Positions 10,245-41,866 of a DNA stretch of 64,000 nucleotides are shown here, one piece after another. Position 1 is the first letter of the stretch; the number at the start of each line of letters is the position of its first letter. A program made the translations under genes and the position numbers. The notes under the pieces are model-generated. The model was not told where the DNA came from and searched no databases. It saw only the letters and a list, made by a program, of their open reading frames with translations. Source of the DNA: Zygnema circumcarinatum SAG 698-1b (taxonomy: Eukaryota; Plantae; Zygnematophyceae); NCBI GenBank assembly GCA_037447605.1, contig CM074822.1:1263492-1327491 (forward strand), given 5' to 3'.

Positions 10245-10596
10245 CCTTGACCACTCGGCCCGCGCCCGGGGTGAGAGTACTAGGACGGAGTAAGTCCTAA
10301 GTACACCTCCCGTGGTTGACTGTAGCGTTTCGCTACATTACTCCCCTTTGTGAGAATGTGAACGCCCTCGTTCACAGGTGTGGGGTGGTAAAGGCAGCTC
10401 GTAGTTTCAACGGCACGCGTCAAACTCTACGTGATAACCGGGAGGGCTCAGCGATAATCCCGGTCAAGTCCCTTTCCGAGTTGCGCGGGGACGGCTCAGG
10501 AACCCCCCGAGCCGCCCTCGCCCGCTCTCCTGCGGCCTGCGCCTCCCAGTACAAGTGTATGAGCTCTTGGCAATTGGTCAAGTTGCCCTCGGCTTC

Positions 10597-14465: not shown

Positions 14466-17400
14466 TGAAGCAGGGGTTTACCTCACTTCCGGGCGCCACC
14501 GGTGTCGCCTCCATTGAACTTGAGTTCCCACGGATGAAGACATTCAAACTCTCAAAGCTCTATCTTACTTCACTCATCGCCCATAACAACAGAATGAAGC
14601 TACAAGACAAGCACAGCGGAAATCACAATGAGAGAGTGTTAGGAGAAAGCTCACGGCTCTAAAACTCCTTATAATAAAACTGTCTTCCCACAATGAAGTT
14701 CTCCCACTACTTCAAGGTCCCTCTCACTCACTACCTCACGACACAAGTGTAGGCAGCCTAGCAGCACGAGCAGGCACAGAATAAGACCCGAGACTATGAC
14801 AAAGTAGTGCGGGGTGGGTTACTCCCATAATAAAAACTATGCACTATATAATATGAGTCCGTGACGTGACACACATGTCACGCCGCGTCCTCCATTGCAA
14901 ACCCATGCACTGAGTCTGGAGTGGGCTTGACTCGTAAATAGCTTTATCAGCTAGCTGCCTGTAAAACCTACGGGCGCGCCACCCAGCCTCTTGTCGGATC
15001 GCACATCCGCCCGCATAGCTGCCATTTCCTCGCCAACGCCTTCGCAGTTTCGCCGACAATTCTCGCCGAGCACTCTCAACTCGCTGACCCACATTGCAGC
15101 GTGGTCCACGCGGGCGCATTCCTGCCCGCCAAATATCTTATGTCGCTTCACAAGCCGCACTTTTGCGCCCGCAGCCAGCGCCTCGCTGTCATGTACTCAA
15201 TCAGAGTCGCCAAGGCCCTGCATCATGCTAATCCGCTGCCGCTGCCTCGACTAATCAATAAAGTTAAGCGCATTCGTGATCTAATTTTTACTTCTGTGTC
15301 ACGCCACACCAATCATTGCCTCAGATCACAAGACTCAAGGCAAGACTCACCAAAGTCAGAGCACCGACATTACTAAATCTAAGAGCACTACGCCTAGCAG
15401 ATCTCATGTTCTACAAACTGAGCACCACAACAGTTATTGTGTGCCATACAATGTCTAACTATCATACACTAACACTAACAATCCCCCTCTTGGGACTCAG
15501 TTCCTCATGGGCCCTAGCCCAATCAATCTGCTGTTCACTAGTAGTGTCTCCCCACTGACCCCCTTGGTCAACATGTCTGCAGCCTGCTCTTTTGTTCCTA
15601 CAAACTTCACCACTATCATCCCTTCCTCTACCAACTCTCGCACATAATGATATTGCACCCTAATGTGCTTGGTTCTCTTATGAAACACAGGGTTCTCCAT
15701 GAGGGCTATAGATGACTGGTTGTCCGTAAAAAGAGTCAATGGTGTTTGTGGTTGCTTACATTCATCAAAGAAATGTTGGAACCACATCCCCTCCTTCGCT
15801 GCATGGCACGCTCCCATGTACTCTCCTTCGGTGCTCGACAGCGCCACCGAATCTTGTAACTTCGAGCTCCATGAGATCGCGCCTCCTCCGTTCAGGAACA
15901 CAAATCCTGACGTCGATCGTGACGTGTCAACATCACCTCCCCAATCAGAGTCGTGTACCCATCACTCAAGTTGGCCTCCCTCTCAAATCTGAGATCAGAA
16001 TCCAAGGTCCCTTTTCTATGCACCTGAAAACTGGGCTTCACGGCTCCCAATGTTCGTGACCGAGCCTTATGAACCGACGTTGAGCTTCACGGCTTTTGCC
16101 AAGTCGACGCAGTACCTATCATCAGATATTAAATTCCCATTGCCGACATCTGTAATGCACTCGTAGACATTCTCTCTTCAGACTCCTCCGTGATCTGTCG
16201 CCGCATCATATCTCTCATTAACGTGATTCGATCTCCATCGAACTCGAGCAAGGACGGCACTCCTCCATTTTGAACCTGGCAAGTACATCTGCGGCGTACT
16301 TCTTCTGACAAAGAAATAAGCTGCCGTCCTGCCCCCTCTTCAACTGCATTCCTAGGAGATACTGTGCCTCCCCTAGATCCGACATTTTGAAGTTAACTTC
16401 CAAAAACTGTTTCAAATCATTGATTCTCTCCAATGAGAGGCTCACCATTATGAGGTCGTCCACGTAGATCCCAACGTACATGAGATCTGCCTCTTCCCCT
16501 TGTCGGTAGACGGAATGATCCGTCTCGAATCGCGCAAATCCGTTACTCCTCAAGAGGTCATCAATTTTCTCGTACCAAATCCTGGGCGCCTGTTTCAGTC
16601 CGTACAGACTCTTCACAAGACGACAAACGAGATGCTCCTGCCCCGGGACAACTTTCCCTTCGGGCTGTACCATGTAGATCTCCTCAGCGAGATCTCCGTA
16701 CAGAAACGCAGTCTTGATATCGAGTTGATGTACGTGCATCCCCTCGGCTGCTGCAATCGATATTAGGGCACGGAGGGAGTTGAACTTCACCACGGGGGCG
16801 AAGGTCTCCGTGTAGTCGATTCCGTACGCCTGGCTGAAGCCCTTCGCCACCAGCCGCGCCTTGTAACGGTCGACACTCCCGTCCGCCTTTCGCTTCACCT
16901 TGAACACCCACTTGCATCCAATGGCCCTCCTTCCCCTCGGCAGCTCCTCAAGTCGCCATGTGCCATTCTCCAGCAAACTGTCCCACTCGCTGTCGATTGC
17001 TGCTCGCCACTTCTCTCCATCGACCCCGTCGTGCGCTTCCTCAAAGGTTTGCGGTTCGGTGATCACAGTGGGCAGCTCCAGGTCCGCTGAGTCTGTGGTG
17101 GCACCTTCCCTGCATTTCCAGGTTAGTCCGCGAAGGCCTGTAGCATCAGGCCTTCCTCACCACACGGGTGCTCCTCCGAGGTCCTTGCGCTCTCCGGCTC
17201 CTCGTGTTGAAGAAAATCCCCGGGACAAACCCGGGAGGCATGCTCGACAACATAGCCTCTCTCTCAGCCGTCTCCAAATCCTCAGACTCCTGCCCATGCA
17301 AAGGTACAGTTTCGGCCGAGTTCTCCTCGTCGGACAGGTGAGTGTATAGTGGTGCCGCCTCCGCCGACGGGTTGCGGCTCTGCTTGCGGCCTCGGGTTCA

Positions 17401-17626
17401 ACTCCCACGGCCGCTTCCACGTTCGGCGTTGCTTCAAGCTCAGCTCCCGCGCTCTCAGGCGTGCTGATCTCCTCTGAAGCTGTGACCTGAGAGGCGTCCA
17501 TGCCCTCTTCGCTGGTCTCCACATCCTCGTACACAATTTCCAAACCTGCCTTTGGGGTGCGGGTCTCACCTAGCCGAGTCACCGCCCCCTTCTCATCCAC
17601 CGTAACGTCTCTCGAGCTCTGCACTT
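14466..17626 (-). mobile_element. Ty1/Copia, 3' part: RT (16218-17066), RNase H (15497-15901), PPT, 3' LTR 14466-15480; 5' part lost in a gap
   Basis: EPQTFEEA...WVFKVKR...YKARLVAKG...YVDDL; GGAISWSSKLQDSVALSSTEGEY...HKRTKHI. PPT AAGAGGGGGAT precedes the LTR start TGTTAGTG at 15480. The LTR is similar to the solo LTR at 25885-26884. Confidence 0.85.
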
Positions 17627-17636
17627 NNNNNNNNNN

Positions 17637-20600
17637 GCCAAGTCCAAAACAGCCAATCCAAAGGCTGACGCCGCGCCGCGTCAGTTTCGATTCGCGCGCA
17701 GTTTCGCGCGTCACGTCACAGCTTCGATTTGCTCCGCGTCCGCGTCCGCGCCACGTCACATTTCAAATCGTCGCGTTGCGCCTCGTCACTTCTGACTCCG
17801 CCGCGCCGCGCCTCTCCACCGACCAAAGTCCGTACCGCCGCCTGTCGGTCTAGGCGCACATCGCCGCCAAGGGCCACACACAACACACACACACAAAACT
17901 AATGTCCCAACAACAACTTGTCTAGTGACTAACTACTATACACTAACAATCCCCCTCTTTGGGACTTTTAGTTTTGCATGGGCCCCAGCCCAACCAACCT
18001 GCCATTCACCAACAGGGTTTCTCCGCTAACTCCCTTCGTTAGCATATCGCCGGCTTGCTCCTTCGTGCCTACGAACTTCACATCGATCAAGCCCTCCTCG
18101 ACCAACTCCCGTACATAATGGTACTGCACTCTGATGTGCTTGGTCCGCTTGTGAAACACAGGGTTTCCCACCAGGGCAATCGATGATTGATTGCTCCGAT
18201 TGAACAAAGGTAATCGAGGCGTTGTTCTCTCTTCACATTCATCAAAAACTGCTTTGGAACCATCGCCCTCCTTTGCAACATATTGACAAGCACCCATGTA
18301 CTCGCCTTACGTACCGATGCGCTACCGTCCCGCAGCTTGGGCTCCGCGAAATTGCTCCACCTCCCATGCAATTAAATGAAACCTGAAGTCGAGCGCGATG
18401 TATCTACATAACCGCCCCAATCTGAGTCTGAATAGCCAATCACTCTGGTTGGCCCTCTCATACGATCCCATAATCAAAAGCGTCCCTCTCACATATCAGA
18501 ATATGCTCTTCCACGGCCTCCCATGCCGAGGGCCCGGTTTCTCCATGGTCGGCTGGCCGGCGAGCTCAGCTGGCGGGTCGGACGGCGTTCCAATCATCAG
18601 GTACACATCAGACTCCCGATCGCAGGCACATGGACTCCGAACATCTTCTGGCCTCTGCTGCACTTTCGAAGGTGACATCTCAGCCGGCCGGTCCCGAATG
18701 CCCATCTCCGCCGAGCGGGCATGGCCTAGAATCCTCCATGTGGAGCCGGGCAAGAACATCACGATGCATACTTCTTCGACCGCGAGAAATAAGCTGCCAT
18801 GCGCCTCTTGGTGCATCCCAAGCGGAATCACTGGCGCCTCCCAAATCGACATCTTGAAATTCGCTTAGGAAAACAACTCTTTCAAGGCTGATTCTTTCAG
18901 CGAGAGCTCACCATTATGAGATCATCAAGCGTAGATCGACAAAACATGATGTCAGCCCCCTCTCCTTGGCCGGTACCGCGGGAATGATACGTTTGGTCGA
19001 TTGAAACCATTCCTCCTCAGAAGATCATCTATCTTCTCGTACCACACTCTGGGCGCCTGCTTCAAACCATATAGGCTCTTCACTAGTCGACAGACTAGGT
19101 GTTCCTTTCCTAGGACCACCTTCCCCTCTGGCTGCTCCATGTAGATCTCTTCCGTTAGATCTCCGTACAGGAATGCCGTCTTGATGTCCAACTGATGGAC
19201 ATGCATTCCTTCAGCCGCTGCGATGGAAATCAAGGCTCTCAAGGAATTGAACTTTACCACTGGAGCGAACGTCTCCATGTAGTCAACCCCATACTGCTGG
19301 GCGTATCCCTTCGCCACTAGCCGCGCCTTGTATCTGTCCACGCTTTCGTCTGCCTTCCTCTTGACTTTGAAGACCCATTTGCAGCCAATAGCTCGCCTCC
19401 CTTGAGGCAGCTTCTCCAACCTCCACGTGCCGTTCTCTATCAAGCTGTCCCACTCGCTATCGATCGCCACCCGCCATTTGTCGCCATCGACTCCGTCGTG
19501 CGCTTCCTCAAAGGTCTGTGGTTCCGTGATCATAAAGCAATGGGCAACTCCCACAAGGTCAGCTGAATCTGAAGGCACTCTTTCATGAATGAGGTTGTTC
19601 TCAGGCGAAGACCGATCTGGTCGCCTCCTGTCCCGACTGCTCTTCCGAACCTCCTTCGCGCTTCGTCCTCTCGGATAAAAGTAGAGTCCGGGTACAAAAC
19701 CTGGAGGCATGTTCGCTAACATAGCCTCTCTCTCGGCCGCTTCAAGGTCCTCAGACTCTTGCGTGTGCAGCGGCACCGTGTCCACGGAGTTCTCCTCTTC
19801 CTCAATCAACTGAGTGTGCACTGGAATCGTCTCCGTCGAATTCTGCGGCTCCTCTGCATGCGCCTCTTCTGGCGACTCTCCAACATCAGCAGGCTCGCTT
19901 GACGCAGCTGCTGGCTCGGCTCCTTCACTTTGTGATGTGCTGGCATCCTGCACAGTGACATCACGCTCTCCACTCGTCTCTCCCTCCTCATACACGATCT
20001 CGAAATCCGCTTTCGCTGGAGGAAAGATCTGAGAGTCTGCAACACGCTCAACAGCACTTCCCTCATCAATTGTAATGTCCCTCGTGCTGTAACAACTCGC
20101 CCCCTGGCAGGCTGCTCTGAACGTTGAAGTGCCAAAGAGAGGAGGGGGGAGAGAGAGGGAGACGAGCGTGAGCTCAATGCTGGTACAAAGAGCCCGGATG
20201 GTCTCCCATCCGTGCGCAGTCATATAAAAGCTCCCAGATTGAACCCACCGGCATGGGGGCCGGGAGGCGGGGCTGCTTAATCGAAACCGCCCGGCGTGGC
20301 GAGATCCCTTAATGATTATGTCGGCTAAGGACAACGATAGTCTCGCCCATCTCACGGGGCAGCGTCGCCAACGCGGCGCGCGCGTCGTCTGCCAGCTGCA
20401 ACTAAAATAAGCGAGTGAGACTTGTCGGCTAAATGCAGAGTGCAGTGGTACTTATCGAAAGATGCCGCGCATCTCGCCCAGATCGCGCCCGCCCGGCGCA
20501 TGCCTGCGGCGCGTCGCGGCGGCGCGGCCCCGAGATCTGGCCGCGGGATCCGCATATGTCGGTGCGGCCGTACGATCCGTACGGCCGACGTCCCACGATC

Positions 20601-23600
20601 AAAAAGAGATCCCTTGCCAGCGGCAAGGTCGAACCCAAGACCTCTTGTGAGACGGCGGCGTCCTATCTGCTGGTGAGATGAAGGAAAAGTCATAGTATCA
20701 CTATGAGTATGCCTCCAGGGTCACGCTGTAGCGTTACGCTACACGTGCTCAGGACCTCCTGCAGTCGAGGGTTCCACACCCTATACGTGCGGCTGTTGGT
20801 GTTATAGCCGAGAACATAACCCTCCACCGCTCGGGGGTCAAACTTCTTCTTCTGTCGCGCCTTGGGCAGTGCAGCCCAGCATCGCGCGCCAAAGGTCCTC
20901 AGGTGGGAAACTGTGGGCTTTCTCCCACTCCACATCTGCTCAGGGACCTGGTCTTTCAGAACAGAAGACGGACATCTGTTTCTAATGTACGCAGCAGTAG
21001 AAACCGCTTCTCCCCAAAAAGAAGCTGGAAAGGGGGAATCAATCAACATGAATTAGGAGCCATGTCCCCAATGTCGATTCACTTTCGCTTCGGCTGCTCT
21101 ACGCGTACTCACGAGGGAATAAGAGGCCGACTCATGCACTTATACGCGGTTCTTGGGGAACTCTGCGACTCCTTCGATTTAGTGCCGCCATTTATGCGAG
21201 CGCCAAAGCCTTGACTTGTCCTGATTACTGTCTCCGCACGGCTCCAGCCAATCTCGAAGGCTCGAAAGCCTGCGACTTGTGCTTGAGGAAGCGTAATCCA
21301 AATCTTCCTCGAGTAATCGTCGAGGAACGTGACGAAGTAACGTGCTCGGCCGTTGGTCGCCGGTGTAACTGGGCCACACAAGTCAGAATGTACCAATTCC
21401 AACTTCTCTTGCGCTCGATAGGACTCGTCTCCACTCCTCACGAATGGTCTCCTGTGCGCCTTGCCCTCCACACACTCCTGGCACAACCCAAGCTCCTTCT
21501 CCACTACACCCGGGGTCTAGCCCACGGACTAACCCCTTCTCAGCCAACTGCTGCATCCCTCTATGGTGTAAGTGACCAATTCTTCTATGCCATACATCTA
21601 CGGCATTCTCTGAGATTGCATTGGCATGCTCATAATTCTCCCTCTTGTAATCAAGATAATACAGCCCTCCTCTCTCATAACCCTTAAACAACTGTCTCCC
21701 AGTTTCTGTATGGATGGCCACGCGCGGCTTCTCTCAAGCAGGAACCTTTGTATCGCCTGCTTACACACTTGGCTATGAGACATGAAATTACGCTTTAGCT
21801 TCGGGGGTGAACATCCTGAGTGGCTTAACTTCTCTTGTATGTCTTCTTCGTGATGGTCGGCCCGTCTCAGTATCATCCTCAGCCTCGCCTCTAAATTACG
21901 AGGCGACTCCTTCACGGTTCTTTGAATGAATTTCGAAATTGTCTTCTCCAGGATACAGCCGAGCTTGGAGAACATCGATGTGTCTCCGCACATATGCGTA
22001 GAAGCGCCGGAATCAATCAGCCACGGCCGCTTCGGATCCTCTACCTGAATCCTTCCCACAAACGCATTCTCAGTATTCTCTACCAGCAAGAGGTTGTTCT
22101 CAACTGCTACCTTGCAGTCTGAACTCCTGTGGCCTCTCTTCTTGCATTTGAAGCAAGTGCCACTGAACGCCTTCTTCTCCTTCTTGCTGGATGAAGTCGC
22201 GTTTCCTCCCTTCTCTTGGCTGCCTCTGTTCTTGAAGCAATCGCTGGAGTAGTGGCCGATCTTGCCACACGTATAACACGTAATCGCCGAGCGTTCTCCT
22301 CGGGCTGACTTCGGGGCGCCTCCTCTTCGATTCGGTCGAGTGTGCAACGCAAGCACTTTCTCCTCAGGGCTGCCGACATCCTGAATGGAGTCCTCCTCCT
22401 TTATCCTACGCTTGACTTGCTCAAGAGTCATCGTGGTATTAGTCAGGACTGTCCTCAAAGCCGCCACTGCCACATCGAATCTACTGGTCAAACCCCCTAG
22501 AAACTGGCTTATCTTATGGTCTGCCTCTAATGGTTTCCCAAGGGCTATGAACCTCTCCATCAGGGCATCCAAACCTGACCATATAAGCCACAGTTTTCTC
22601 ATGCGGAAGTCATCTTCATCTTGCCTAGCTAGATGTAAGACGGCGATCGTCACATTGTCTTTTACATCATACATTTCCTCTAGGCACTTCCACATAGCAT
22701 GAGAGGTTTTTAGATCATATAGCATAGAGGACGGACTTCCTCTTACGCTCATTACAATCTGCGTCAGGGCCTTGTTGTCCTTGGCTCTCCATCGTGCGAG
22801 CGCCACGTCGTACTCCGACTGCTGCTCCGCTGAGGCTCCAACCGGTAACTCCGGCGCCTTGATGCTGCCATCAACATACCCAAGCAACCCCTTGCCGACA
22901 AGCGAACCAGCACCATCTCCATGCTTTGTAGTACGCGCCCATCAAAGGCGGAATGCTGAACTTGGCGGTAGTCCTCCGGTCTCCATGAGCTCGATACCAC
23001 TTGTTGGAGTGCGAGGGACTCCTCCTTTGCTAGCGTCGGATTCCTCCATTCGGGTCACCCTCCATCGGAGTTCGCGTTCCAATCGACGATGACATTTCCA
23101 AATCCCTCACATTCACTCATAGCCCATTTTACTCACAGAGTGAATCACAGCAATAATGCACAGCGGAATAACAGAGAGAAAAGGATAGGAGAAAGCTCCT
23201 GGCTCTAAAACTCCTTAATAGTGAATTCACTCATACATTGAGAGACCCCCTCTCAAATCGGCCGCTCAGCAATCTCACAGCTCACTACCTCACAGCACGA
23301 GTAAGTGTAGTGTCGCAACACGAGCGAACAGCATAACAGAGACTACAACAGCCTGAATGAATTGTTTGCCAACAACAAAAAACAATCCTTAAGTACTATG
23401 TCACTACACACGTGACAACAACATGCNNNNNNNNNNCCTCCAAGATAGATGACGCGTCAATCCTCGCGTCGTCTCACGCCACCGACAATTCGACGCAGCT
23501 CCGTACAGTTCTGAATCGCGCGCCGACAATCTGACGCCACTTTGCGCCAAGTCCAAAACAGCCAATCCAAAGGCTGACGCCGCGCCGCGTCAGTTTCGAT

Positions 23601-30900: not shown

Positions 30901-32757
30901 TTTTTTTGGTTTTTTTCCCATTTTAGGGCTACATGGCAACACCTGATTGGATAACCAAAAAACCACATTTCCTACAAACAATCCAAAAACACACAACAGC
31001 ACCAACGTGGCAATTTCTGACTGGATAAGAGGTATACCACATTCCGTTCGTGCTAACCAATGAGAATGCACCACGTAGCAACTTTAAACACGCTGCGACA
31101 CATACCATATTTACAACAATACGTCCCGTAAAACATTCAAACCGAACACTGTCGTACATAGAAAACGACACGTGGCAATGAAAGAATGAGTACGCGATAT
31201 ACCCCATTTTCTGCGCATTCGATCCGACGAAACGCACAACCAATCAGGACGCGCGACGTGGCAACGTCAGACTTTGAGAAACTTCGTTTCGGCGGTTTGC
31301 GAACTTTCCGGCGCGGTTTTCAACTTTTTTATTCAACTAAATGACAAAAGTTGAATCATGAAAACGCACCCTAAATAACACTTTCCTACAAAAATTGACA
31401 AAAAATATGCTTTCCGTATGCCCCTTGGTGCGGTTTGGGCCCTGGGGCGGTGTGACCAAAAACGACAAAAATAAATCAACTAATTCGTACTGCCTGTATG
31501 TGCGGTTTAGGGGCCAGACAGGTGAAAGACGCGCCAGACGACAAACATCTAAAACCGTCTTCCGTACTTTAAACGGTCGGTCTTGACAATCACCAATGTG
31601 ATCTTTTCTGGTGTGTGACGAAAATAACGACAAGAAAAATCTTCTCGTGTGTACTATCGATTTGCTGTCATAAGCCTGTAACCGTATGACACAAAAAATG
31701 ACAAAACATGTCGCCCAAATCTGTTTGTTTGCTCAGCTGCAGCACTGACCTGATTGGTTCACCAGTGTGGACAAGAGACATTCGTACGAACGTTGACTTT
31801 TATTTCTGAACGGGGATTTTGCCTTCGTAGTAAAACTCTACAAGCGCTATTATCTCTCCTCCTACAAGCGCTTGCTTAAACTAAGTACTGTTTTGAAGAC
31901 AAATCAACCGAACCTCGAGTACTTTTTCTGAAATATAATCCTTCCGAAACAATGTAGTCAGTAGCACTGACGAATTTCTCGAAACTAACGAACCATAGAA
32001 CTGCCGACTCCTATTAGTCGGACGTGCAACGCCGTAAAGTCCGAAGGACCAGTACTCCCTCCCCGCTGCAGCGGTAGCCCGCCACGTGTCTTCCACAGAA
32101 ACGACAAATATGTCGTACAAACGCACTAGCTCTTCCTACGTCATTTTGAACTCTATCCTTTGGTCCAACTATACTCCGTACATTGGAGACGTGACATGAT
32201 TGACTTGTAGCTTGCTGCGTCCGCTTAGAACAAAGAATAGGCACGACCAGAATCCGCAAGAAAACAAACCAGCCCAAAGCGACAAAAAGGGAGGTCCGCG
32301 GGTAGGTGTTGGAGGCACGACAACCCCCCCCGATCCTCGTCGTGCCCCTCACGTCACGTGACTAAGAAGTCTGTCAGAGCCGTGACTCAACGTGACGTGA
32401 CTCGTACTTCCAATATTTATCCTCCTGCAAGCAAACAAATGCGGCCGTACGCTTCGCAAATGTAGGCCGTACCGTAAGGCTCGCTGACGTGGCAGGGGCA
32501 CCGAGGGGCACGGTTCTGGGAGTTTCCCGGCAGGTCGTGCCCCGGGCATGCCCCTTGGCAGGCATGCCCTTGGCCGGCATGCCCCTCACGCCTGCCTTCA
32601 ACACTATCCGCGGGGCTTTGTGGAAGGGAGGTGCGGCGGGAGAGAGGGACAGGGAGGGTGGCTAAGGGGTCGGTTAGGCGGTTACTCAGAAGCCTGTGAG
32701 AGAGGGAGAGCTGGTTTGTCAGTCGGTAGAGTTCAGAGACGAGGGCGGTGGAGCGCA

Positions 32758-35700
32758 ATGGGCCGGCAATGGGTCGGATGGGTCACGCTCGTCCTCCTCG
32801 TTGTGGGATGCTGCAAAGCGGAAGGTGAGGGGGGGGGAGGGGGGGAGGGCAGAAGGGGGAGGGGAGAGGGATAGGGTGGGAGGAGAGGGAGGGGAGGGAG
32901 GCAGGGGCGGACGGGGGGGGGAGGGGGCAGGAGGGAGGGGAGAGGGGTAAGGGGGGGAAGGAGGGGGGCAGGGGAGGTGGGGAGGGGAGGGCAGGGGGGG
33001 GAGGGGAGTAAGGAGAGGNNNNNNNNNNAGGGGGACGGGAGGGAGGGGTGGGGGACAAGGGAGGGCAGGGGGGGAAGGGGCAAGTGGGGTGGGGCAGGGC
33101 AGGGGGGGGGGACGGGAGGGAGGAAGGGGAGGGCGAGGGTTGGGAGGAGAGTGGCCGTGGGGGGAGGGTAGAGGGTGAGGGGAGGAGGGGAGGGGGAAGG
33201 CGGGGGGGGAGGGCAGGGGGGGGAGGGTGGGGAGGTAGGGAGGACAGGGGCGGAGAGGAGGGGGGAAGGGGAGGGCATGGGGGGGAGGACAAGGGGGGGA
33301 GGGGCCGTTGGGGGAGGGTAGAGGTTCAGGGAAGGTGGGGTGGGGAAGGCAGGGGGACAGGAAACGGGGGGGGGGGGCAAGGTGGGAAGGGCAGGTGGGG
33401 AGGGGAGGTAAGAGGGGGACGGCAAGGGGGAGAGGAGGGCAGGCGGGCAAGGGGGGAAGGAAAGGGGGAAGGGCAAGGGGGAGAGGACAAGGGCAAGGGG
33501 GGAGGGGCCAAGTGTTGGAACACGTGAGGGAGAGCAAAGTCAATGAGGAAAGGCACGGGAGGAGGACAATGGGGGGGAGGGCAGGGAGGGTGGCCAAGGG
33601 TGGAGTACAAGCGGGGAGGGCAAAGGTGAGGCAGGCGGGGGGGTTGGGCTGGGGTATGGGGGCGAGAGTAGGGCGGGAGGGCAGGGGGGGGGCGGGCAAG
33701 GAGGGAGGACGAGCGGAAGGTAGGCAAAGCGGGAGGGCAGGGGGTAGGACAAGGGGGGTAGCGGAGGCAAGGGGGTGAGGGCAAGGGGGGAGGGGGTTGG
33801 GAACACGGGTGGGGAAACGTAGTTTGGGAGGAAACAAGAGAGAATGGTGTAAAGAGGAGGAAGGTGTGATTTAGACTTGGGAACGAAAAGAAGAGAGCGG
33901 AGCAGTGAGAGAGAGAAAAACGAGTGGTTAAGATCAAAAGTGAGGAAAAGATGGATAGGGTGTGATTCAATGGAGAAGATGGAAAAAGTGAAAAGTTCGT
34001 TGGTATCGAAACGAAATAAGAAAGAGAGAACCGGGAAGATAAACCAAGAAAAGGATCAACGAGAAAGGAAAAATGGCGTCATGGGCGTAAGCGAATCAGG
34101 AGAAATGAAGGGTGAGACAAAAAAGGGCGGGATTTTGAGACGGAGTCAGCAAGAAAAATAGACTAAGAGAGCCATTGCAAAAGAAGACAATGAATTAAGG
34201 CAGTGTGGATTACAAGAGGTTGGACAGGAGAAGGTTGGTACTGTACAGTCGTTACATAAGCATCAGATTCAATGCGTGCGTGTTTATCATGTTTGAGGTG
34301 TATCTCCCCCAGTTTCTCCGTGTGTTTTTTTGTAATTGTTTTTCGACTAGGGATTGCAGACAATCTGGCACTCCGTAAGCCCGCAAGTCAAGAGAATACT
34401 TGGTGGTACTGGACCGCTGATAGGGCTGTGGACGGCTACAACGGCAATGGCAGAGCAGATGCTGGAGAAGATACATGCGCGAGCACATATCATGGAAGGT
34501 GGTGGAAGGTGGATTTACTTGGTATTGCAACGGTGGACAGCGTTGCACTGTATGGGAGGACAGATGTCGCCCAAGAACGGATGAATGGAGTGTCGGTGTG
34601 GATCGGTCCTAACAATGACGCGTGGAATGGAGAAGGGAACACAGAGTGCGACCCCACTAACGTGTTCGTGTTCAACCCCACAAACAATGGCTTCCCGTTC
34701 ATCAAGAAGTGTTCCTCTCTGGTCGGACGTTACGTTTGGGTGTTCGTTCTCGCCTACACTGACCTCACTCTATGCGAAGTAAAGGTTTATGGAACACTTC
34801 AAGGTATGTGTTGGATTGTTTCAGACGGATGCATTGAGGTTCTCCACTTTGCGTGTTTCTTTCGTTGATGCCGGTTATGACTTAGGTAAGTGCGCCTTTT
34901 TTTCATTGACCAATGCATTGTCCATCGGCTACTTTCTAAAATGGAAAGGATTCACTTCTTGAGACCTAGTTCTTCGTGTGCGGATTTGCAGCACTTGCTC
35001 CACCGCCGCCAAGCCCGCCATCTCCACCTTCACCTCCGAGCCCACCTCCACCACCACCACGACCTCCAAGGCCACCGCCATCACCTCCACCGAGAGGTGA
35101 GAGGACCAGATGAATTCGTTTGTAGCAATGTGTTCAATCAGGTTCAGGTGCGTTGTTCCAAAAGTGGTTCTATGCATGCCGCTTTATTCGACCACCTCCT
35201 TCAGACTTCGCGCCTCGGTTGTGTCTTTTGCTTCTGCGCGTTTTGTTAACAAGTTGAAATCTAATTTTCTTTTCCCACTCCTAAAGAAATCTAAATGTTA
35301 CATTCGTCGGTGGTCTACTGAAGTAATGTTTATCACTATTAAGTTTTGTTCCTGAATTCATGATCTATCAATTGAGATGATAGAGAATCGAAGACGTGGA
35401 TAAAGTTGTCCGGATGGTTAAGTGCGACTATTTCTTGTCGAGCAGTGGTTTTGTATTTGGATGAGTTATTTGAAGTTTTATGCATAGGAACGTGAATAAG
35501 TTTGTTTTTTGAATGAAAAATTGCATTTTTTTTTCACAGTAAGATGACCGTATACACTTCTGCTTGTTTCTATCTAATTGTTTTCCAATTGGAGATTGCA
35601 GAGAATCTGGCTCTTCGTAAGCCCGCATCTCAGGCAAGCACCTACTATTATATGACTGCTGATCAGGCTGTGGACGGCTATAACGGAAATGGCAAAATAA

Positions 35701-38700
35701 GTTATGGACAAGATAAATGCGCGAGCACTACCGATGCTATTCGGAAACCAATGTGGTGGAAGGTGGATTTACTTGGTATTGCAACGGTGGACAGCGTTGC
35801 ACTGTATGGGAGGACAGATTACAACCAAGACAAGTTGAATGGAGTCCAGGTGTGGATCGGTCCTAACAGTGAAGTGTGGAATGAAGAAGGGAACACAGAG
35901 TGCGACCCCACTAACGTCTTTGTGTACGGCCCCAAAAGCAATGGCTTCCCGTTCGTCAAGAAGTGTTCCTTTTTGGTCGGACGTTACGTTTGGGTGTACC
36001 TTCCAACCTTCAATTCCCTCACTCTATGCGAAGTAAAGGTTTATGGAACACTTCAAGGTATGTCTTGGATTGTTTCAGACGGATGCATTCAGGATTTCCT
36101 CGTTGTGTGTTTCTTTCGTTGATGCCGGTTATGACTTAGATAAGGGTGGCTTTTTTTCTTTGACCAATGCATTGTCGCTCGACTACTCTCTAAACCGGAT
36201 AGGAACCACGTCTTGATACCTAGTTCTTCGTGTGCGGCTGTGCAGCACCACCTCCACCACCTCCAAGGCCACCATCTCCACCACCACCTCCAAGCCCACC
36301 GCCACCACCTCCATCTCCACCTCCACCTCCGAGCCCACCGCCATCACCACCACCATCTCCAAGGCCACCGCCATCACCTCCGAGCCCTCCAGAGAGTGGT
36401 GAGAGAGTAAAACCCTAAAAACCCTTAAAACCCTAAAAACCCTACAAAGGACGATATGACTCCGTTTGTAGCAATCTCGGTTGTGTCTTTTCCTATGGAG
36501 CGATTCCTTATCAAGGTGAAATTTAAATTTCTTATCAAACTCCGAAATAAATCTGGTGAGGGTACATTCGTCGGAGTTCTAGCGAAGTCATGTTCATCCT
36601 TATTAGTTTGTTCTCCAAATTTCATTCTCGGTCAATGACGATGATTGAAAATCGAAGAGGCGGATGAAGATGTTTGTTTGGTTAAGTCTGAATATTTCTT
36701 GTCGAGTAGTGGTTTTGTATTCGGATGAGTTACACTTTGTTGTTAGGAATGTCATTATCTTATTTTTGTGGATGAAAATTTGCATTCGTCAGTATGTTTC
36801 ACAATATGGTGATCGCATATATACTTCTGCTTGATGGTATCTGATTGCTTTTCAACTGGAGATTGCAGGCAATCTGGCACTACTTAAGCCCGCATTTCAG
36901 GAGGACGATTATTACGATTGCTATTGCGAAGGACTGGGGTCGGGGAGCTACTTGGACGCTGATAGGGCTGTGGACGGCGACGCCAATGGCAATCTTTTTT
37001 GGGGAAAGTGTTCAAGCACAGATTATGGGCAGTGGTGGGGGGTGGATTTACTTAGTAGTGCAGTTGTGGACAATGTTGCACTGTATGGGAAAACAGGCTA
37101 CGCCGAAGCGTTGAATGGAGTGCAAGTGTGGATCGGGTCTGACAATATCGCGTGGAACGGAACAGGGAACACAGAGTGCGACCCCACTAATGTTTTTGTG
37201 TACAGCTACCCCGACGGCTACCCGATCTTAAAGAGGTGTTCCTCGCTGGTTGGACGTTACGTTTGGGTGTACCTTCCACGTCCTAGACTTACTCTCTGCG
37301 AAGTAAAGGTTTTTGGAACATATTTAGGTATGTCTTGGATTAACCCAGACGGATGAATTTATGAACTCCTCGTTGCACGTTCCTATTTTTAAGCCGGTTA
37401 TGACTTAGACTAAGTCATAGACATAGACCCACTTCAGTTGCAGCTTTCTTCCATGCTGAATGTGGAATCGGCCCCCTTTGATTATTTTCGCGTCTGCTCG
37501 TTGTGAAACTGATTTGAGAGAGGTTGGTCCTTTTCGAGCAACGAGTGTTGGCTGGGATTGAGAGACAGAGGGAGAGGCGGAACAAGCGGGAGAAAGAGTG
37601 AAAGATAAAGAGGAGAAGAGAGTAGAGGAAAGGATAGATTTAGAGAGGAGGGGGGAAGGGAGGGTTGGAGAGAGAGCAAGCACCTATGCATCCAAGGAGA
37701 GCGTCCAAGAGGACGATTGAAAGGAGAGCAAACTAAATACCTCGAATATAAAGGCAGAGAGGTTGATGACAGGAGAAAAGAATTTTGAGCATTTTCGCCA
37801 GCGATGGGGATGGAAATTCTCGTTTCTTTTGTCCGTCGAACACAGGATCGTACGTTTTTGGGGTTTTGCAGATTATTGCAGGTTTTACCTTGCTCAATTA
37901 AAATTCTTGTCGATCAACTACTCTCTTAGACGGATAGGAGCCACGTCTTGATACCATGTTCTTCGTGTGCGGCTGTGCAGCGCTTGGTCCACCTCCGCCA
38001 AGCCCACCGCCGCCACCTCCAAGCCCGCCCTCTCCACCTCCACCTCCGAGCCCACCTCCAAGCCCACCGCCACCACCTCCACCTCCAAGCCCACCGCCTG
38101 GAATTCTGAGAGGTGAAACGAGATGACTTCATTTGTAGCAATGTGTTCAATGAGGGTAAAGGAATACTGAGAGGTGAGAGGACGAGATGAGGTCATTTGA
38201 AGCAATGTATTCAATCGGGGTCAGATGCGTTGTTCCAAAAGGGGTTCTATGCATGCCGCGCTATACGACCTTCAAACCTTGCACCTCGGTTGTGTCTTTT
38301 TTCCTTTTGAGTGATTCCTTATCAAGTTGAAGTATAATTTTCTTATCTCCCTCCTGAAGAAATCTAAAGGTTACGTTCGTCGGTCTTCTAGCGAAATCAT
38401 GTTTATCTTTATTAAGTTGTGCTCCAGATTTCATGCTCAGTCAATGACGATGATTGAGAATCGAAGAGGCGGATGAAGATGTTTGGATGGTTAAGTCTGA
38501 CTATTTTTTTTCTAGGAGTGGTTGTGCAGTTGGATGAGTTACACTTCTATGTATAGGAATGTCGTTATCTTGTTTTTTGTGAATGAAAAATTGCAATTAT
38601 GTTTCACCATAAGGTTACTTCATTTACATTTTGCTTCTGTTTGTTTGTATGTAATTTTTCCAACTGGTGATCGCAGACAATCTTGCTCTCTATATGCCCG

Positions 38701-40291
38701 CATTTCAGTCGAGCACTGCAGACTACTGGAATGCTAATAGGGCTGTGGACGGCTACAACGGCAATGGCAGATTTGGTGCTGGAGAAGATACATGCTCGAG
38801 CACTGACGTTGGGCCACCAAATTGGTGGTATTTGGACCTCCGTCATAATGCAACGGTGAACACTGTTTTGTTGTATGGGAGAACAGATCGCCGTCAAGAA
38901 CGGTTGAATGGAGTGCAGGTGTGGATCGGTCCTAGCAATTACAGGTGGAATAGATCAGGGAACACAGAGTGCGACCCCACTAATGTTTTTGTGTACGGCC
39001 CCACAAGCGATGGCTTCCCCTTCGTAAAGAGTTGTTCCTACCTTGTCGGACGTTACGTTTGGGTGTACCTTCCAACCTACACTTTCCTCACTCTATGCGA
39101 AGTGAAGGTTTATGGAGCATTTCTAGGTATGTTCTGGATTGTTTCAGACGAATTCATTCAGGAACTCCTCGGTGCACGGTTTCTTGATGCCGGTTATGAC
39201 TTCGATTTGTGCGATTTTGTGCTGAATCGACCATTTTTTCTGTGTGCCTGCCTGCTTTCAACGGATGTGAGGGAGCTTGTTCTTTTCAAGCAAATGCAAC
39301 GTTTTTCCTCACGCGGATGTGTTGGATGCTCAAAGCGCGCGTTTCCAAAATTTCCCAAGAATTGGGACAGTTTGTGCTCGGTAGCTCGAACCTTTGGCGA
39401 TGCATCAGTGTGGTTAAGCGTGGTTGCAGGTCTCATATGTTATTTTTGCAAAACTATGGCACCTTATGCGGACCCAATCTTTTTCCTGCACTGCATGTTG
39501 ATTTGAGTTTTACCGTTTCTCTGTGGTGTTCAGCAAGTAGCACCCCAGCCAGTTTCTCCTACCCGACCTTTACCTTTTCAAGTGAAATACTTCGTCGATA
39601 TTCAGCAAAGATCGTTCCGTGGAAATTGCAACTAACAAGAGACGATAAGAGTCTTACTGGAATTGGACTCTATCAAAGTCCAATCGAACTTCTACGAGAC
39701 AATGCGACTGGGGGATGCCAAGAGGCTTCATTCAGCACGAATTTCACCTTTAAAATTTCCAGCAGCAATGCACGGACCGGCGATGGGTTCACATTTTTCC
39801 TTCTTACGTCAAATGCAGTGCTGGGTTATTTCGGTCGATCAAATGGTGGAAATCTTGGATACACGTACAACTCTACATTAAGAAATTCAGTGGGGAGTGC
39901 AGCAATTACGTTTGATACCTATCAAAACGTCGATCTTGGAGAGCCTGCCAGCCGTTTCGTGGGCGTGCGTGAAAACTTTAAGAGAACCGCCAAGCTTCAA
40001 ACCACAACTCGTCTCGATAATCTTACCTCTGAGAAGTATGCTTGGATTGACTACGACGGCGCCTTGAAACTATGGAGCGTGTACCTCGGTGGCCCCTTAG
40101 GTATCAAACCCGCGAACCCGCTGCTGACGCACTCGGCGGCGCTTTGCAGCGTGTTGCGGCCAATCACGTGTGCCGCATGTGCGGGGCTGACGACTGCTTA
40201 CGTCGGCTTCAGCGCCGCGACCGGGGGCGCGACAGCACAGCACGAGATATTGAGTTGGGACTTTGAGAGCACTTGGCCTAGCACAGCCTAA
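32758..40291 (+). CDS. Secreted mosaic lectin, 1007 aa: signal peptide - FTL1 - Pro/Ser linker - FTL2 - linker - FTL3 - linker - FTL4 - legume (L-type) lectin. Exons 32758-32824, 34360-34803, 34992-35096, 35602-36057, 36246-36398, 36869-37327, 37981-38112, 38677-39126, 39534-40291
   Basis: All introns are GT-AG and phase 1, and the exons total 3024 nt in one frame. F-type lectin signature NLAL.KPA.Q...A..AVDG...WW.VDL...V.LYGRTD...C...GRYV.V...L.LCEVKV occurs four times. SPPPP-type linkers. L-lectin motifs FSTNFTF, GDGFTF, ITFDTYQN, AWIDYDG, YVGFSAATG, HEILSWDF. The first exon (MGRQWVGWVTLVLLVVGCCKAE) is less certain than the rest. Confidence 0.88.
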
Positions 40292-41866
40292 GGAAGGGAT
40301 TGGAGGAGATCAGGCGGCCACGTGGCAGATCTTACGGCGTGAAATGGTTGTCTTGTCCTTAGGAGGTGGCCAGGTGCAGATCGAACGGCGTGAAATGGTT
40401 GTTTTTATATATAAGAGGCGGCCATGTGGAAGATCGAACGGCGTAGAATGGTTGCCTAGTGTTGTGCATGTTGGCAGCAAGTGGGAGTACTGGAGGCTGC
40501 CAATTGGTGGGTGGTTATTGGCTGCCTTCGAATGTGAGGGGCAGGCAGTCAGAGACTCTAATGGGGAGGTGGTAGAGCTAGAGGGGAATGTGAGCTTTTG
40601 AGATGCTGGAAGAGGGGGAGAGAGAGAGTTGGAGGGTGCTGTATAGGCCTGATATGATGGGTGATAGCAGGTTTTGTACTTTGTGTTGTGTGGGGGAGAA
40701 AATTTTGTAGCGAAAATTGAGCAGTAATGGTTGTGTTGTGCGGTGTGAGTGAAGGGCCTGTGCTTCGATTGAATTATCGGGTATTTAATTATTAGTTATT
40801 ACATGTAGAATGTGACCTGTGAGTCTAGACCGGATGCAGTCCCCATCAGCATCCGCTTCTCCTTCTCGAGCGCTTCCCTCTCTGCTCGAAGCCGGGACCT
40901 CCTGCTTCAAGATCTCCGCCTGCAGCACTGGAGGGAGCTCAGAAGTTTAAGGTTCCAATCTTTTAGGGTATCACTTTATGCGTCTCTGACTCTCTCTCTC
41001 CCTCCTGCTTTCCCTATCCACTTCTCCCTCTCCCTCTCCCTCTCCCTCTCCCTCTCCCTCTCCTCCTCCCTCTCCCTCTCCCCTTCCCTCTCCCTCTCCC
41101 TCTCCCTCTCCCTCTCCCTCCCTCTCCCTCTCCCTCTCCCTCTCCCTCTCCCTCTCCTCTCCCTCTCCCTCCCTCTCCTCTCCCTCTCCTCTCCTCTCCC
41201 TCTCCCTCCCCTCTCCTCTCCCTCTCCCTCTCCCTCTCCCTCTCCCTCTTCCTCTTACTCTGCCTTATATCCACCACAATGTCTAATGATAACTAGAAAA
41301 AAGACTTGCTGAAAAGACCCGAGCGGGGGAGGATCCAAGCGTTGCAGGGAGATCCACCAGCCCCCCAGAACCCTTTGTTAGTTTCAGTACAGCTGCCCGC
41401 GTCAGCGTACAGCATCTACAGATAGACCAGCACTTACCTACCCATCACTGAGATCAATGATATTCGATGGAGGGATAATAGCATTGATCTCACGATGGCA
41501 AAGCCATCAATTGTACAGGGATAAAATCATGGGGAACCAATAGAATCGTTCACAAAGGACCTAAAAACAAAAAGAAAGAGCTAATAACCGGAAAGCGACT
41601 TCTAGGCCCAACAACACGGCGCTAGAACATTGTTCGGCACGTCACGCGAGGGAGGGGGTGGAAGACCGCCGGGCCGGGCTCCAACAACCGCGGCACGCCG
41701 AACTTACCGCGGCACTTACCTACCCATCACTTTGATTTTTTTTTTTTTTTTTTTCTTTGATTGCGCTTAAAAGTTGGCGTAGCCTAATTTTGAGACAATA
41801 CGACCGTATGACCGTACATATACGGTCGTACGAATGTTCATTTAAAACGGTTGTAGGGTATTTTAA

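What the first reader, a model, noticed from the sequence alone, without database searches (positions are those of the whole stretch)
32758..40291. Unusual secreted lectin: four F-type (fucolectin) domains on extensin-like Pro-rich stalks plus a legume lectin
F-type lectin domains are best known from animals and bacteria, legume lectin domains are the typical plant carbohydrate-binding module, and SP3-5 linkers are hydroxyproline-rich cell-wall glycoprotein motifs. I do not recognise this combination in one 1007-aa polypeptide. With no transmembrane or kinase domain, it is a candidate multivalent extracellular cross-linker for wall or mucilage assembly, mating-type agglutination or microbe recognition; the function is inference.
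Basis: partly seen in the sequence, partly recalled or inferred. Interest (0 to 1): 0.75.

Follow-up and report, generated by a model that had tools for sequence, protein, structure and literature searches.

The report
Algal four-module lectin on proline stalks
An alga's intact gene encodes a secreted protein with four animal/bacterial-style sugar-binding modules on stiff proline-rich spacers and a plant-style lectin at the end, a combination found nowhere outside this genome, though whether it binds sugars and what it does are untested.

Summary
Window 32758-40291 (+) holds an unbroken nine-exon gene. All introns are GT-AG, all junctions are phase 1, and the exons sum to 3024 nt (1007 codons plus stop).

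The layout is:
- a signal-peptide exon;
- four F-type-lectin (FTL) exons separated by three Ser-Pro(n) linker exons (71-76% Pro);
- a C-terminal legume (L-type) lectin exon.

The assembly gap lies inside a purine-only (AGGGG)n tract of intron 1 and touches no coding frame.

FTL identity is solid. FBP32 matches at E 2.6e-25, and the AF2 model's 11 best PDB matches are all F-type lectin domains (TM 0.78-0.82). The L-lectin matches PF00139 at 1e-35.

The "fucolectin" label is not earned. The fucose-binding His is Ser in all four modules, and FTL3 has lost the whole basic triad. The L-lectin lacks two of four Mn ligands.

No FTL plus L-lectin fusion appeared in the top 150 hits from 1.84 billion representatives, in two word searches, or in a published survey of plant lectin architectures.

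This scan has already noted two paralogues on other DNA of this genome (3 and 9 FTL modules), so this is a family member. Expression could not be tested. The function, a multivalent extracellular binder, is inferred. I class it as a new variant of known kinds, of moderate interest.

The parts
32758..32824 (+). Exon 1: start codon and 22-residue signal-like peptide (MGRQ + hydrophobic core + KAE), ending in phase 1 at donor AAG|GTGAGG
   Evidence: Kyte-Doolittle 9-mer up to 3.18; it is the only ATG/hydrophobic/phase-1 candidate with a consensus donor in the 8.4 kb upstream of exon 2. Its assignment to this gene is inferred, not shown by RNA.
32825..34359 (+). Intron 1 (1535 nt as assembled), with a ~1 kb purine-only (AGGGG)n-like tract and the assembly gap at 33019-33028
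   Evidence: The gap is flanked on both sides by the same low-complexity array.
34360..34803 (+). Exon 2: FTL module 1 (147 aa in frame at 34362-34802); Ser at the His position; RTDVAQER
   Evidence: PF22633 7.2e-08, PF00754 2.1e-07; FBP32 3cqo 2.6e-25, AAA 1k12 5.6e-12.
34992..35096 (+). Exon 3: Pro-rich linker 1 (34 aa, 71% Pro, SPP/SPPPPPP motifs)
35602..36057 (+). Exon 4: FTL module 2; Ser at the His position; RTDYNQDK
36246..36398 (+). Exon 5: Pro-rich linker 2 (50 aa, 76% Pro, five SP3+ motifs)
36869..37327 (+). Exon 6: FTL module 3, the most divergent. It has an 11-residue Cys-containing insertion, and the basic triad is lost (Ser; KTGY-AEAL)
37981..38112 (+). Exon 7: Pro-rich linker 3 (43 aa, 72% Pro, five SP3+ motifs)
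38677..39126 (+). Exon 8: FTL module 4; Ser exactly 26 residues before RTDRRQER; modelled structure has the F-type fold
   Evidence: pLDDT 87.6; top 11 PDB matches are all F-type lectin domains, TM 0.78-0.82.
39534..40291 (+). Exon 9: legume (L-type) lectin domain and TAA stop, joined to FTL4 without a Pro-rich linker
   Evidence: PF00139 1e-35, 123.9 bits; pea lectin and 110 other legume lectin chains.
34804..39533 (+). Introns 2-8. Introns of the same position in the repeat unit are 74-89% identical, so whole cassettes (intron + FTL exon + intron + linker exon) were duplicated in tandem

Best explanation
This is a real, intact gene for a secreted, soluble or wall-bound modular glycoprotein.

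Shown by the sequence:
- A signal peptide is followed by four F-type-lectin-fold beta-sandwich modules. They are separated by three 34-50-residue Ser-Pro(n) linkers, and a legume-type lectin domain sits at the C-terminus.
- Each module and each linker is one phase-1 exon.
- The gene grew by tandem duplication of an intron-FTL exon-intron-linker exon cassette. This layout allows copy number to change without breaking the frame.

Inferred:
- The linkers are hydroxylated and O-glycosylated in the secretory pathway into stiff polyproline-II rods.
- Those rods space five binding modules along a thread, so the protein acts as a multivalent extracellular binder or cross-linker of glycans. The targets could be the alga's own wall or mucilage polymers, or foreign surfaces.
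- The ligand is probably not simply fucose. The fucose-binding His is Ser in every FTL module, as in other FTLs with changed specificity such as the GlcNAc/GalNAc-binding bryohealin.
- FTL3 may be a non-binding spacer.
- The L-lectin keeps its sugar-contact Asp/Gly/Asn and Ca ligands but not a full Mn site.
For: - Gene structure: nine exons, all GT-AG, all phase 1, 3024 nt with a single terminal stop.
- Domain identity: Pfam; PDB sequence matches to FBP32, AAA, S. pneumoniae fucose-binding modules and lectinolysin.
- Fold: AF2 model of FTL4 at pLDDT 87.6, whose 11 best Foldseek PDB matches are all F-type lectin domains.
- L-lectin: PF00139 at 1e-35 and matches to legume lectin chains.
- Structural residues kept in all four FTLs: two disulfide Cys pairs, AVDG and LCEV.
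- Selection: at the 6.5-13% per-lineage divergence implied by the introns, the chance that all four FTL exons stay stop-free by substitution alone is 5e-3 to 4e-5.
- Secretion without an anchor: N-terminal hydrophobic core, no other TM-strength segment, no kinase ORF downstream.
- Cassette duplication: homologous introns are 74-89% identical, and the four FTLs form a 100%-supported clade.
- Earlier scan notes report 3- and 9-module paralogues nearby (not tested here).
- Literature: FTLs with altered motifs bind other sugars (PMC12221842, PMC5712786).
Against: - No RNA or protein evidence was obtainable.
- dN/dS between the four FTL exons is high (0.51-0.77). That fits relaxed constraint as well as diversification.
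- The canonical sugar-binding residues are incomplete in both domain types, so carbohydrate binding itself is unproven.
- The linkers lack Tyr, so covalent extensin-type wall cross-linking is not expected.
- Exon 1 is joined across an intron that holds an assembly gap. An alternative in-frame ATG at 34272 could start the protein without intron 1.
Confidence: 0.6

Rival explanations
1. The protein is real and secreted, but its beta-sandwich modules no longer bind carbohydrate. It would then be a structural hydroxyproline-rich wall protein, or a binder of non-glycan ligands. Precedents from my own knowledge: F5/8-type C relatives that bind lipids or proteins, and L-type lectin receptor-kinase ectodomains reported to bind ATP or peptides.
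For: - His is replaced by Ser in all four FTLs, and FTL3 has lost the whole triad.
- The vicinal Cys82-Cys83 pair that contacts fucose in AAA is absent (PMC5712786).
- The L-lectin lacks the Glu and His Mn ligands.
- dN/dS is 0.5-0.8.
Against: - The Arg-X-Asp-X4-Arg/Lys half of the motif is kept in three modules, as are the Ca-site motifs.
- The L-lectin keeps the Asp/Gly/Asn sugar contacts.
- Non-His FTLs with other sugar specificities are documented (PMC12221842).
- About half of the related FTL domains collected here also lack His at that column (the alignment is fuzzy in that loop).
Confidence: 0.25
2. The nine-exon model is an artefact or a decaying copy. Either the exons belong to more than one transcript, or the locus is an unexpressed duplicate of the larger expressed paralogue.
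For: - No transcript evidence was obtained here.
- dN/dS is fairly high.
- The locus sits next to retroelement-rich DNA.
Against: - There are zero stops or frame shifts in 1007 codons.
- All 16 splice sites are canonical and all in phase 1.
- The neutral-drift simulation makes four intact FTL exons unlikely, at 5e-3 to 4e-5.
- The modules are 55-73% identical to each other, so they are not assembly duplicates.
- A proper signal-peptide exon with a consensus donor in the matching phase lies upstream.
Confidence: 0.12

Closest known systems
F-type lectins (eel agglutinin AAA 1K12; striped bass FBP32 3CQO; tandem multi-FTL proteins of amphioxus, Xenopus and hemichordates)
   Same: Homologous domain (E 2.6e-25 to FBP32). 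Same jelly-roll fold (TM 0.82). Two structural disulfides, the AVDG and LCEV Ca-site motifs, and Arg-X-Asp-X4-Arg/Lys in three modules. Tandem arrays are common in the family.
   Different: His52-equivalent is Ser in all four modules. There is no vicinal Cys-Cys. The best single-domain score to any of 1.84 billion representatives is only ~75 bits. The four modules form their own long-stemmed clade. Long SPn linkers and an L-lectin partner were not seen in any hit.
Bryohealin/BPL-1 and the multi-FTL proteins of the green alga Bryopsis (e.g. GMH44734.1, 9 FTL domains)
   Same: A green-lineage secreted FTL array with Pro-containing linkers. Bryohealin is an FTL that binds GlcNAc/GalNAc rather than fucose and aggregates cell material (PMC12221842; bioRxiv 10.1101/2023.11.22.568388).
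   Different: Bryopsis linkers are short (8-18 aa) or only moderately Pro-rich. There is no L-lectin domain. Its domains score lower against the window profile (27-48 bits) than animal ones and do not group with the window's.
Legume (L-type) lectins and the ectodomains of plant L-type lectin receptor kinases
   Same: PF00139 at 1e-35. Asp/Gly/Asn sugar-contact positions and Ca ligands align with pea lectin. The nearest language-model clusters are streptophyte legume lectins.
   Different: At most 37% identical to anything found. It sits on a very long branch between the plant clade and the metagenome (apparently mostly bacterial) clade. Mn ligands Glu119 and His136 are replaced by Thr and Phe. 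It has four Cys. There is no TM or kinase. It is fused N-terminally to FTL modules, an arrangement absent from the surveyed plant architectures (PMC6362431 Suppl. Table 3).
Chimeric lectin-extensin glycoproteins of Solanaceae (potato/tomato lectin), and algal HRGPs with globular heads on Hyp-rich rods (volvocine pherophorins, Chlamydomonas agglutinins). This comparison is from my own knowledge and was not tested here.
   Same: The design principle: carbohydrate-binding or adhesive globular modules held apart by Ser-Pro(n) rods in a secreted wall glycoprotein.
   Different: The lectin domains are unrelated (hevein or pherophorin versus FTL and L-lectin). Here there are three separate rods, each encoded by its own exon. 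There are no Tyr cross-link motifs.

Membership tests
F-type lectin domain (FTLD) | Sequence homology to characterised FTLDs | tested here: met
   FBP32 at 2.6e-25 and 6.6e-25; AAA about 5e-12; S. pneumoniae modules 1e-08 to 2.5e-10. PF22633 and PF00754 are above gathering score in all four modules.
F-type lectin domain (FTLD) | F-type jelly-roll fold | tested here: met
   AF2 model of FTL4 has pLDDT 87.6. The 11 best Foldseek PDB matches are all FTLDs, TM 0.78-0.82, rmsd 2.2-3.2.
F-type lectin domain (FTLD) | Fucose-binding motif His-X(24/26)-Arg-X-Asp-X4-Arg/Lys (PMC5712786) | tested here: not met
   The His position is Ser in all four modules (C-[AS]-S-T versus C-T-H-T). In FTL4 the Ser lies exactly 26 residues before the Arg. 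R-X-D-X4-R/K is kept in FTL1, FTL2 and FTL4, but FTL3 has K-T-G-Y-A-E-A-L.
F-type lectin domain (FTLD) | Cation-binding motif h-h-D-G-x and C-terminal Cys-Glu | tested here: met
   A-V-D-G and L-C-E-V are invariant in all four modules. The x position is Tyr in three modules and Asp in FTL3, rather than always a small hydrophilic residue.
F-type lectin domain (FTLD) | Vicinal disulfide Cys82-Cys83 that packs against fucose | tested here: not met
   The positions are V-A, Y-N, Y-gap and R-R, against Cys in about 72% of 556 related domains. The pair is also absent in S. pneumoniae modules (alignment).
F-type lectin domain (FTLD) | Binds L-fucose | not testable with these tools
   Needs recombinant protein with a glycan array or ITC.
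Legume (L-type) lectin | Lectin_legB domain | tested here: met
   PF00139 at 1e-35, 123.9 bits versus a cut-off of 26.3, covering profile positions 3-238 of 250.
Legume (L-type) lectin | Sugar-contact Asp81, Gly99 and Asn125 (pea lectin numbering) | tested here: met
   D-G-F-T-F-F, G-G-N-L-G and Y-Q-N align to these positions. The residue before the Asp is Gly, not Ala.
Legume (L-type) lectin | Complete Mn/Ca double metal site (Glu119, Asp121, Asp129, His136; Asp121, Phe123 O, Asn125, Asp129) | tested here: not met
   Glu119 is Thr and His136 is Phe. Asp121 and Asn125 are kept, and Asp129 aligns to Glu (alignment). Ligand numbering is from my own knowledge of pea lectin.
L-type lectin receptor-like kinase | Transmembrane helix and cytoplasmic kinase after the lectin domain | tested here: not met
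   The stop codon comes 5 residues after the domain. The strongest 19-mer hydrophobicity is 1.47. There is no Pkinase hit in the + strand ORFs of at least 70 aa scanned, up to 8 kb downstream.
Extensin (HRGP) | Repeated Ser-Pro3-5 motifs | tested here: met
   2, 5 and 5 SP3+ motifs in the three linkers; 71-76% Pro.
Extensin (HRGP) | Tyr-containing cross-linking motifs (YXY, VYK) | tested here: not met
   None of the three linker exons contains Tyr (translations).
Extensin (HRGP) | Prolyl hydroxylation and Hyp-O-arabinosylation | not testable with these tools
   Needs protein chemistry.

The most novel reading that the evidence does not exclude
Streptophyte algae carry a lineage-specific, exon-shuffled family of secreted FTL plus L-lectin proteins on hydroxyproline-rich rods. 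Module number (3, 4, 9) and binding loops would diversify quickly, giving a variable extracellular recognition repertoire for microbes or mating partners. This would be a plant-lineage counterpart of the diversified animal F-type lectin repertoires, and a precursor context for the L-lectin ectodomain later used by land-plant receptor kinases.
Probability: 0.15. Interest if true: 0.7.

Novelty: new variant of a known kind. Interest (0 to 1): 0.45.

Why it matters
F-type lectin domains are reported as absent from land plants. In one survey of 26 green algae they were found only in Bryopsis and Volvocaceae (PMC5712786; bioRxiv 10.1101/2023.11.22.568388). Earlier scan notes place this genome in the streptophyte algae. 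I did not check that here. If they are right, the family extends the domain into the lineage that gave rise to land plants.

The gene also joins the FTL domain to the legume-lectin domain, the ectodomain of a major land-plant receptor-kinase class, in an architecture not listed in the published survey of plant lectin arrangements (PMC6362431).

Every module and linker is a phase-1 exon, a textbook substrate for exon duplication. That makes the family a tractable case for studying how multivalent wall or adhesion proteins change valency.

In practice it offers defined single modules for glycan-array work on algal wall, mucilage or microbe recognition.

The value is limited for now by the absence of expression and binding data.

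Tried and rejected
1. Word-index protein searches found no close relative and no transcript fragment. Queries were the L-lectin exon (range 138-439 aa), FTL4 inside a stop-free stretch (156-495 aa) and the L-lectin inside a 363-aa stop-free stretch (200-635 aa). The only FTL hit was P0025 (37% identity, FTL plus coiled coil).

2. I ran the profile search of 1.84 billion representatives because the novelty claim rests on the absence of relatives. It gave 5646 hits. The top 150 are multi-FTL proteins of animals, bacteria, Bryopsis and unknown organisms. None carries an L-lectin or linkers as Pro-rich as these.

3. A metagenome contig scan with the FTL profile found no confirmed relative.

4. Trees left the origin of both domains unresolved, so I make no claim of bacterial, animal or vertical origin. 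The L-lectin sits on a 2.08 branch between the plant clade and the metagenome (apparently mostly bacterial) clade. The four FTLs form a clade on a 1.2 stem with no supported sister.

5. The first AF2 run, using only the four window modules as the alignment, was poor (pLDDT 61.5). I replaced it with a 26-row alignment.

6. Region-wise dN/dS showed no clear contrast between hypervariable loops and a conserved core, so I dropped that idea.

8. The joined 1007-aa model was never built or searched.

9. I rejected the read-through start at ATG 34272 as the main model. The equivalent hydrophobic translation occurs at the pyrimidine-rich 3' ends of introns 3, 5 and 7, but it is not excluded.
Full report
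**Observation**

I read window 32500-40500, translated all three forward frames and located the splice-site contexts. The nine exons are:

| Exon | Coordinates | Content |
|---|---|---|
| E1 | 32758-32824 | signal-like peptide |
| E2 | 34360-34803 | FTL1 |
| E3 | 34992-35096 | Pro-rich linker 1 |
| E4 | 35602-36057 | FTL2 |
| E5 | 36246-36398 | Pro-rich linker 2 |
| E6 | 36869-37327 | FTL3 |
| E7 | 37981-38112 | Pro-rich linker 3 |
| E8 | 38677-39126 | FTL4 |
| E9 | 39534-40291 | L-type lectin, TAA stop |

Every intron is GT..AG, most with a TGCAG-type acceptor. Every junction is phase 1. The exon lengths add up to 3024 nt, which is 1007 codons plus stop.

I checked continuity arithmetically from coordinates and phases. 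Each exon was searched separately by reference.

**The gap**

The run of N at 33019-33028 lies in intron 1, 195 nt after the E1 donor. Tandem Repeats Finder shows one purine-only (AGGGG)n-like array from 32823 to 33304, spanning both sides of the gap. The gap is therefore an assembly break inside a low-complexity intronic tract. No coding frame crosses it. Only the length of intron 1, and formally the link of E1 to the rest, depend on it.

**Exon 1**

E1 encodes MGRQ, a hydrophobic core (9-mer hydropathy up to 3.18) and KAE. It ends at AAG|GTGAGG in the phase that exon 2 needs.

I scanned the 8.4 kb upstream of exon 2 for ATG-started, hydrophobic, phase-1 segments. Only this one has a consensus donor.

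An in-frame ATG at 34272 could start translation without intron 1. Its hydrophobic peptide, however, is the translation of the pyrimidine-rich 3' end of the intron. The same kind of peptide appears before FTL2, FTL3 and FTL4. I take E1 as the start at about 80%.

**Domain identity**

- All four FTL exons pass Pfam's gathering scores for PF22633 and PF00754, and E9 hits PF00139 (Lectin_legB) at 1e-35.
- Against PDB sequences, FTL1 and FTL4 match striped-bass FBP32 (2.6e-25 and 6.6e-25), eel agglutinin AAA (about 5e-12), the S. pneumoniae fucose-binding modules and lectinolysin.
- An AF2 model of FTL4 from a 26-row alignment has mean pLDDT 87.6. Its 11 best Foldseek PDB matches are all F-type lectin domains (TM 0.78-0.82). 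CBM32, chitosan-binding and galactose-oxidase N-domains follow.
- E9 matches pea lectin and about 110 other legume lectin chains.
- The three linker exons are 34, 50 and 43 residues long, 71-76% Pro, with 2, 5 and 5 SP3+ motifs and no Tyr.
- FTL4 is joined to the L-lectin directly, with no Pro-rich exon between them.
- No 19-mer after the signal peptide reaches TM-like hydropathy.
- No kinase or other Pfam domain was found in ORFs within about 8 kb downstream.

**Binding residues**

The FTL fucose motif is His, then Arg-X-Asp-X4-Arg/Lys. The Ca motif is h-h-D-G-x (PMC5712786).

- In the gap-free FBP32 alignments, the His column holds Ser in FTL1 and FTL4. The four-module alignment shows C-[AS]-S-T in all four.
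- In FTL4 the Ser lies exactly 26 residues before the Arg, the same spacing as His52 to Arg79 in AAA.
- The Arg-X-Asp-X4-Arg/Lys half is kept in FTL1, FTL2 and FTL4. It is lost in FTL3 (K-T-G-Y-A-E-A-L), which also carries an 11-residue Cys-containing insertion.
- The vicinal Cys-Cys pair is absent.
- AVDG, LCEV and two structural Cys pairs are invariant.
- In the L-lectin, the Asp81, Gly99 and Asn125 sugar contacts and Asp121 are kept. Glu119 is Thr and His136 is Phe, so half of the Mn site is gone (ligand numbering from my own knowledge of pea lectin).

Both domain types are clear family members by homology and fold. Neither meets the full functional motif, so the name 'fucolectin' is not justified. 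Carbohydrate binding is plausible but unproven.

Bryohealin, a green-algal FTL, binds GlcNAc/GalNAc rather than fucose (PMC12221842). An altered motif therefore does not imply a dead module.

**How the gene arose, and whether it is under selection**

- Introns in the same position of the repeat unit are 74-89% identical over most of their length. The unit of duplication was the whole cassette: intron, FTL exon, intron, linker exon.
- The FTL exons are 74-83% identical at the DNA level and 55-73% at the protein level. Pairwise dS is 0.23-0.53 and dN/dS is 0.51-0.77.
- There is no clear contrast between regions of the domain.
- The high ratio would fit relaxed constraint. A substitution-only simulation at the 6.5-13% per-lineage divergence implied by the introns gives 5e-3 to 4e-5 for all four exons staying stop-free. 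All 16 splice sites are also intact.
- The frame has therefore been kept by selection.
- In a domain tree, the four modules form a 100%-supported clade on a long stem (1.2 substitutions per site) with no supported sister among animal, bacterial, Bryopsis or unknown FTLs.

**Relatives elsewhere**

- Three word-index searches, covering 138-635 aa, found nothing above 37% identity. They found no protein combining FTL and L-lectin Pfam domains.
- The novelty claim rests on absence, so I ran the profile of the four modules against 1.84 billion representatives. It returned 5646 hits. The best single-domain score is only about 75 bits.
- The named top hits are amphioxus, Xenopus, lungfish, bonefish, acorn worm, opossum and turtle fucolectin arrays, one Bryopsis protein, and bacterial or unknown metagenome proteins.
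- None of the 150 listed hits contains an L-lectin detectable with the window's domain. None has linkers as Pro-rich as these.
- The Bryopsis protein GMH44734.1 has a signal peptide and nine FTLs. Its linkers are short or moderately Pro-rich, and it has no L-lectin.
- A metagenome contig scan found no relative.
- The L-lectin sits on a 2.08-long branch between land-plant sequences and a clade of metagenome proteins, many of which carry PEP-CTERM (PF07589) motifs and so look bacterial. Its origin is unresolved.
- The language-model atlas places the L-lectin nearest streptophyte legume-lectin clusters and the FTL nearest chordate fucolectin clusters. It shows no combined cluster.

**Literature**

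- FTLDs are reported from diatoms, brown and green algae and algal viruses, but not from higher plants (PMC5712786).
- A survey of 26 green algae found them only in Bryopsis and Volvocaceae (bioRxiv 10.1101/2023.11.22.568388).
- F-type modules were recently reported in Chlorophyta receptor-kinase ectodomains (PMC12757656).
- The survey of plant lectin architectures across 38 genomes lists legume-lectin arrangements only alone, doubled, or with kinase, RING or transferase domains. It lists none with an FTL or galactose-binding-like domain. It counts one legume lectin in Klebsormidium and none in Chara (PMC6362431, Supplementary Tables 2 and 3).
- A full-text search found no paper linking F-type lectins to streptophyte algae. 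The only paper holding both kinds of term was the lectin survey PMC6362431.

**What the scan knew already**

Earlier notes place this genome in the streptophyte algae (unchecked by me). They describe two paralogues on the same sequence. One has three FTL modules plus an L-lectin, 215 kb beyond this window. One has nine modules, 73 kb beyond it. A follow-up agent called the nine-module gene expressed but imperfectly assembled.

I could not test either claim. They mean this finding is one member of a local gene family, not a singleton. The copy here has no frame breaks.

**Interpretation**

Shown:
- an intact, selected, nine-exon gene;
- a signal peptide, four FTL-fold modules, three SPn linkers and one L-lectin domain;
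- no membrane anchor and no kinase.

Inferred:
- secretion;
- prolyl hydroxylation and O-glycosylation of the linkers into stiff rods;
- multivalent binding or cross-linking of extracellular glycans.

The ligand and the biological role are unknown. The role could be wall or mucilage assembly, adhesion or mating, or microbe recognition.

The main rival is that the modules have lost sugar binding and the protein is structural or binds other ligands (about 0.25). An artefactual or dead gene model is unlikely (about 0.12).

**Verdict**

This is a new variant of known kinds. Two well-known lectin folds and an extensin-like linker are combined in an architecture not found outside this genome, in a lineage where FTLs were not reported. 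Interest is moderate (0.45). It is an unexpected architecture for plant-lectin and cell-wall specialists and can be tested experimentally. There is no functional or expression evidence yet, and the scan has already seen it in two paralogues.

Noticed in passing
window 32823-33800: Intron 1 begins with about 1 kb of purine-only (AGGGG)n-like sequence on the coding strand (GC skew about +0.5), and the assembly gap sits inside it. Similar strongly G-skewed blocks lie at about 50-52 kb and 56-58 kb, and a C-skewed block at 58-60 kb. These tracts could form G-quadruplexes or R-loops and seem to be where this assembly breaks.
   Followed up: partly
window 36409-36448: A short plant-telomere-like array (AAAACCCTA x 4.4, 90% matches) sits inside intron 5 of the lectin gene.
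   Followed up: no
window 40312-40454: A 52-bp unit is repeated 2.7 times (80% matches) starting 21 nt after the stop codon, in the likely 3' UTR. No function is known.
   Followed up: no
window 7977-22887: The upstream DNA is rich in retroelements: copia-type RT (RVT_2), gag and zinc-knuckle ORFs, integrase, and a gypsy-type RT-RNase H ORF.
   Followed up: partly
window 34360-39126 (exons 2-8): All seven internal exons are symmetric phase 1-1. Skipping or duplicating any FTL or linker exon would keep the frame, so alternative splicing could produce isoforms with fewer modules.
   Followed up: no
proteins P0025, P0048, P0110 (metagenome/Logan, organism unknown): These are a separate group of FTL-domain proteins. 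P0025 carries a long coiled-coil tail, and P0025 and P0048 have domains with Ala in place of the motif His (C-T-A-T). In the domain tree they cluster together, apart from animal and bacterial FTLs.
   Followed up: partly
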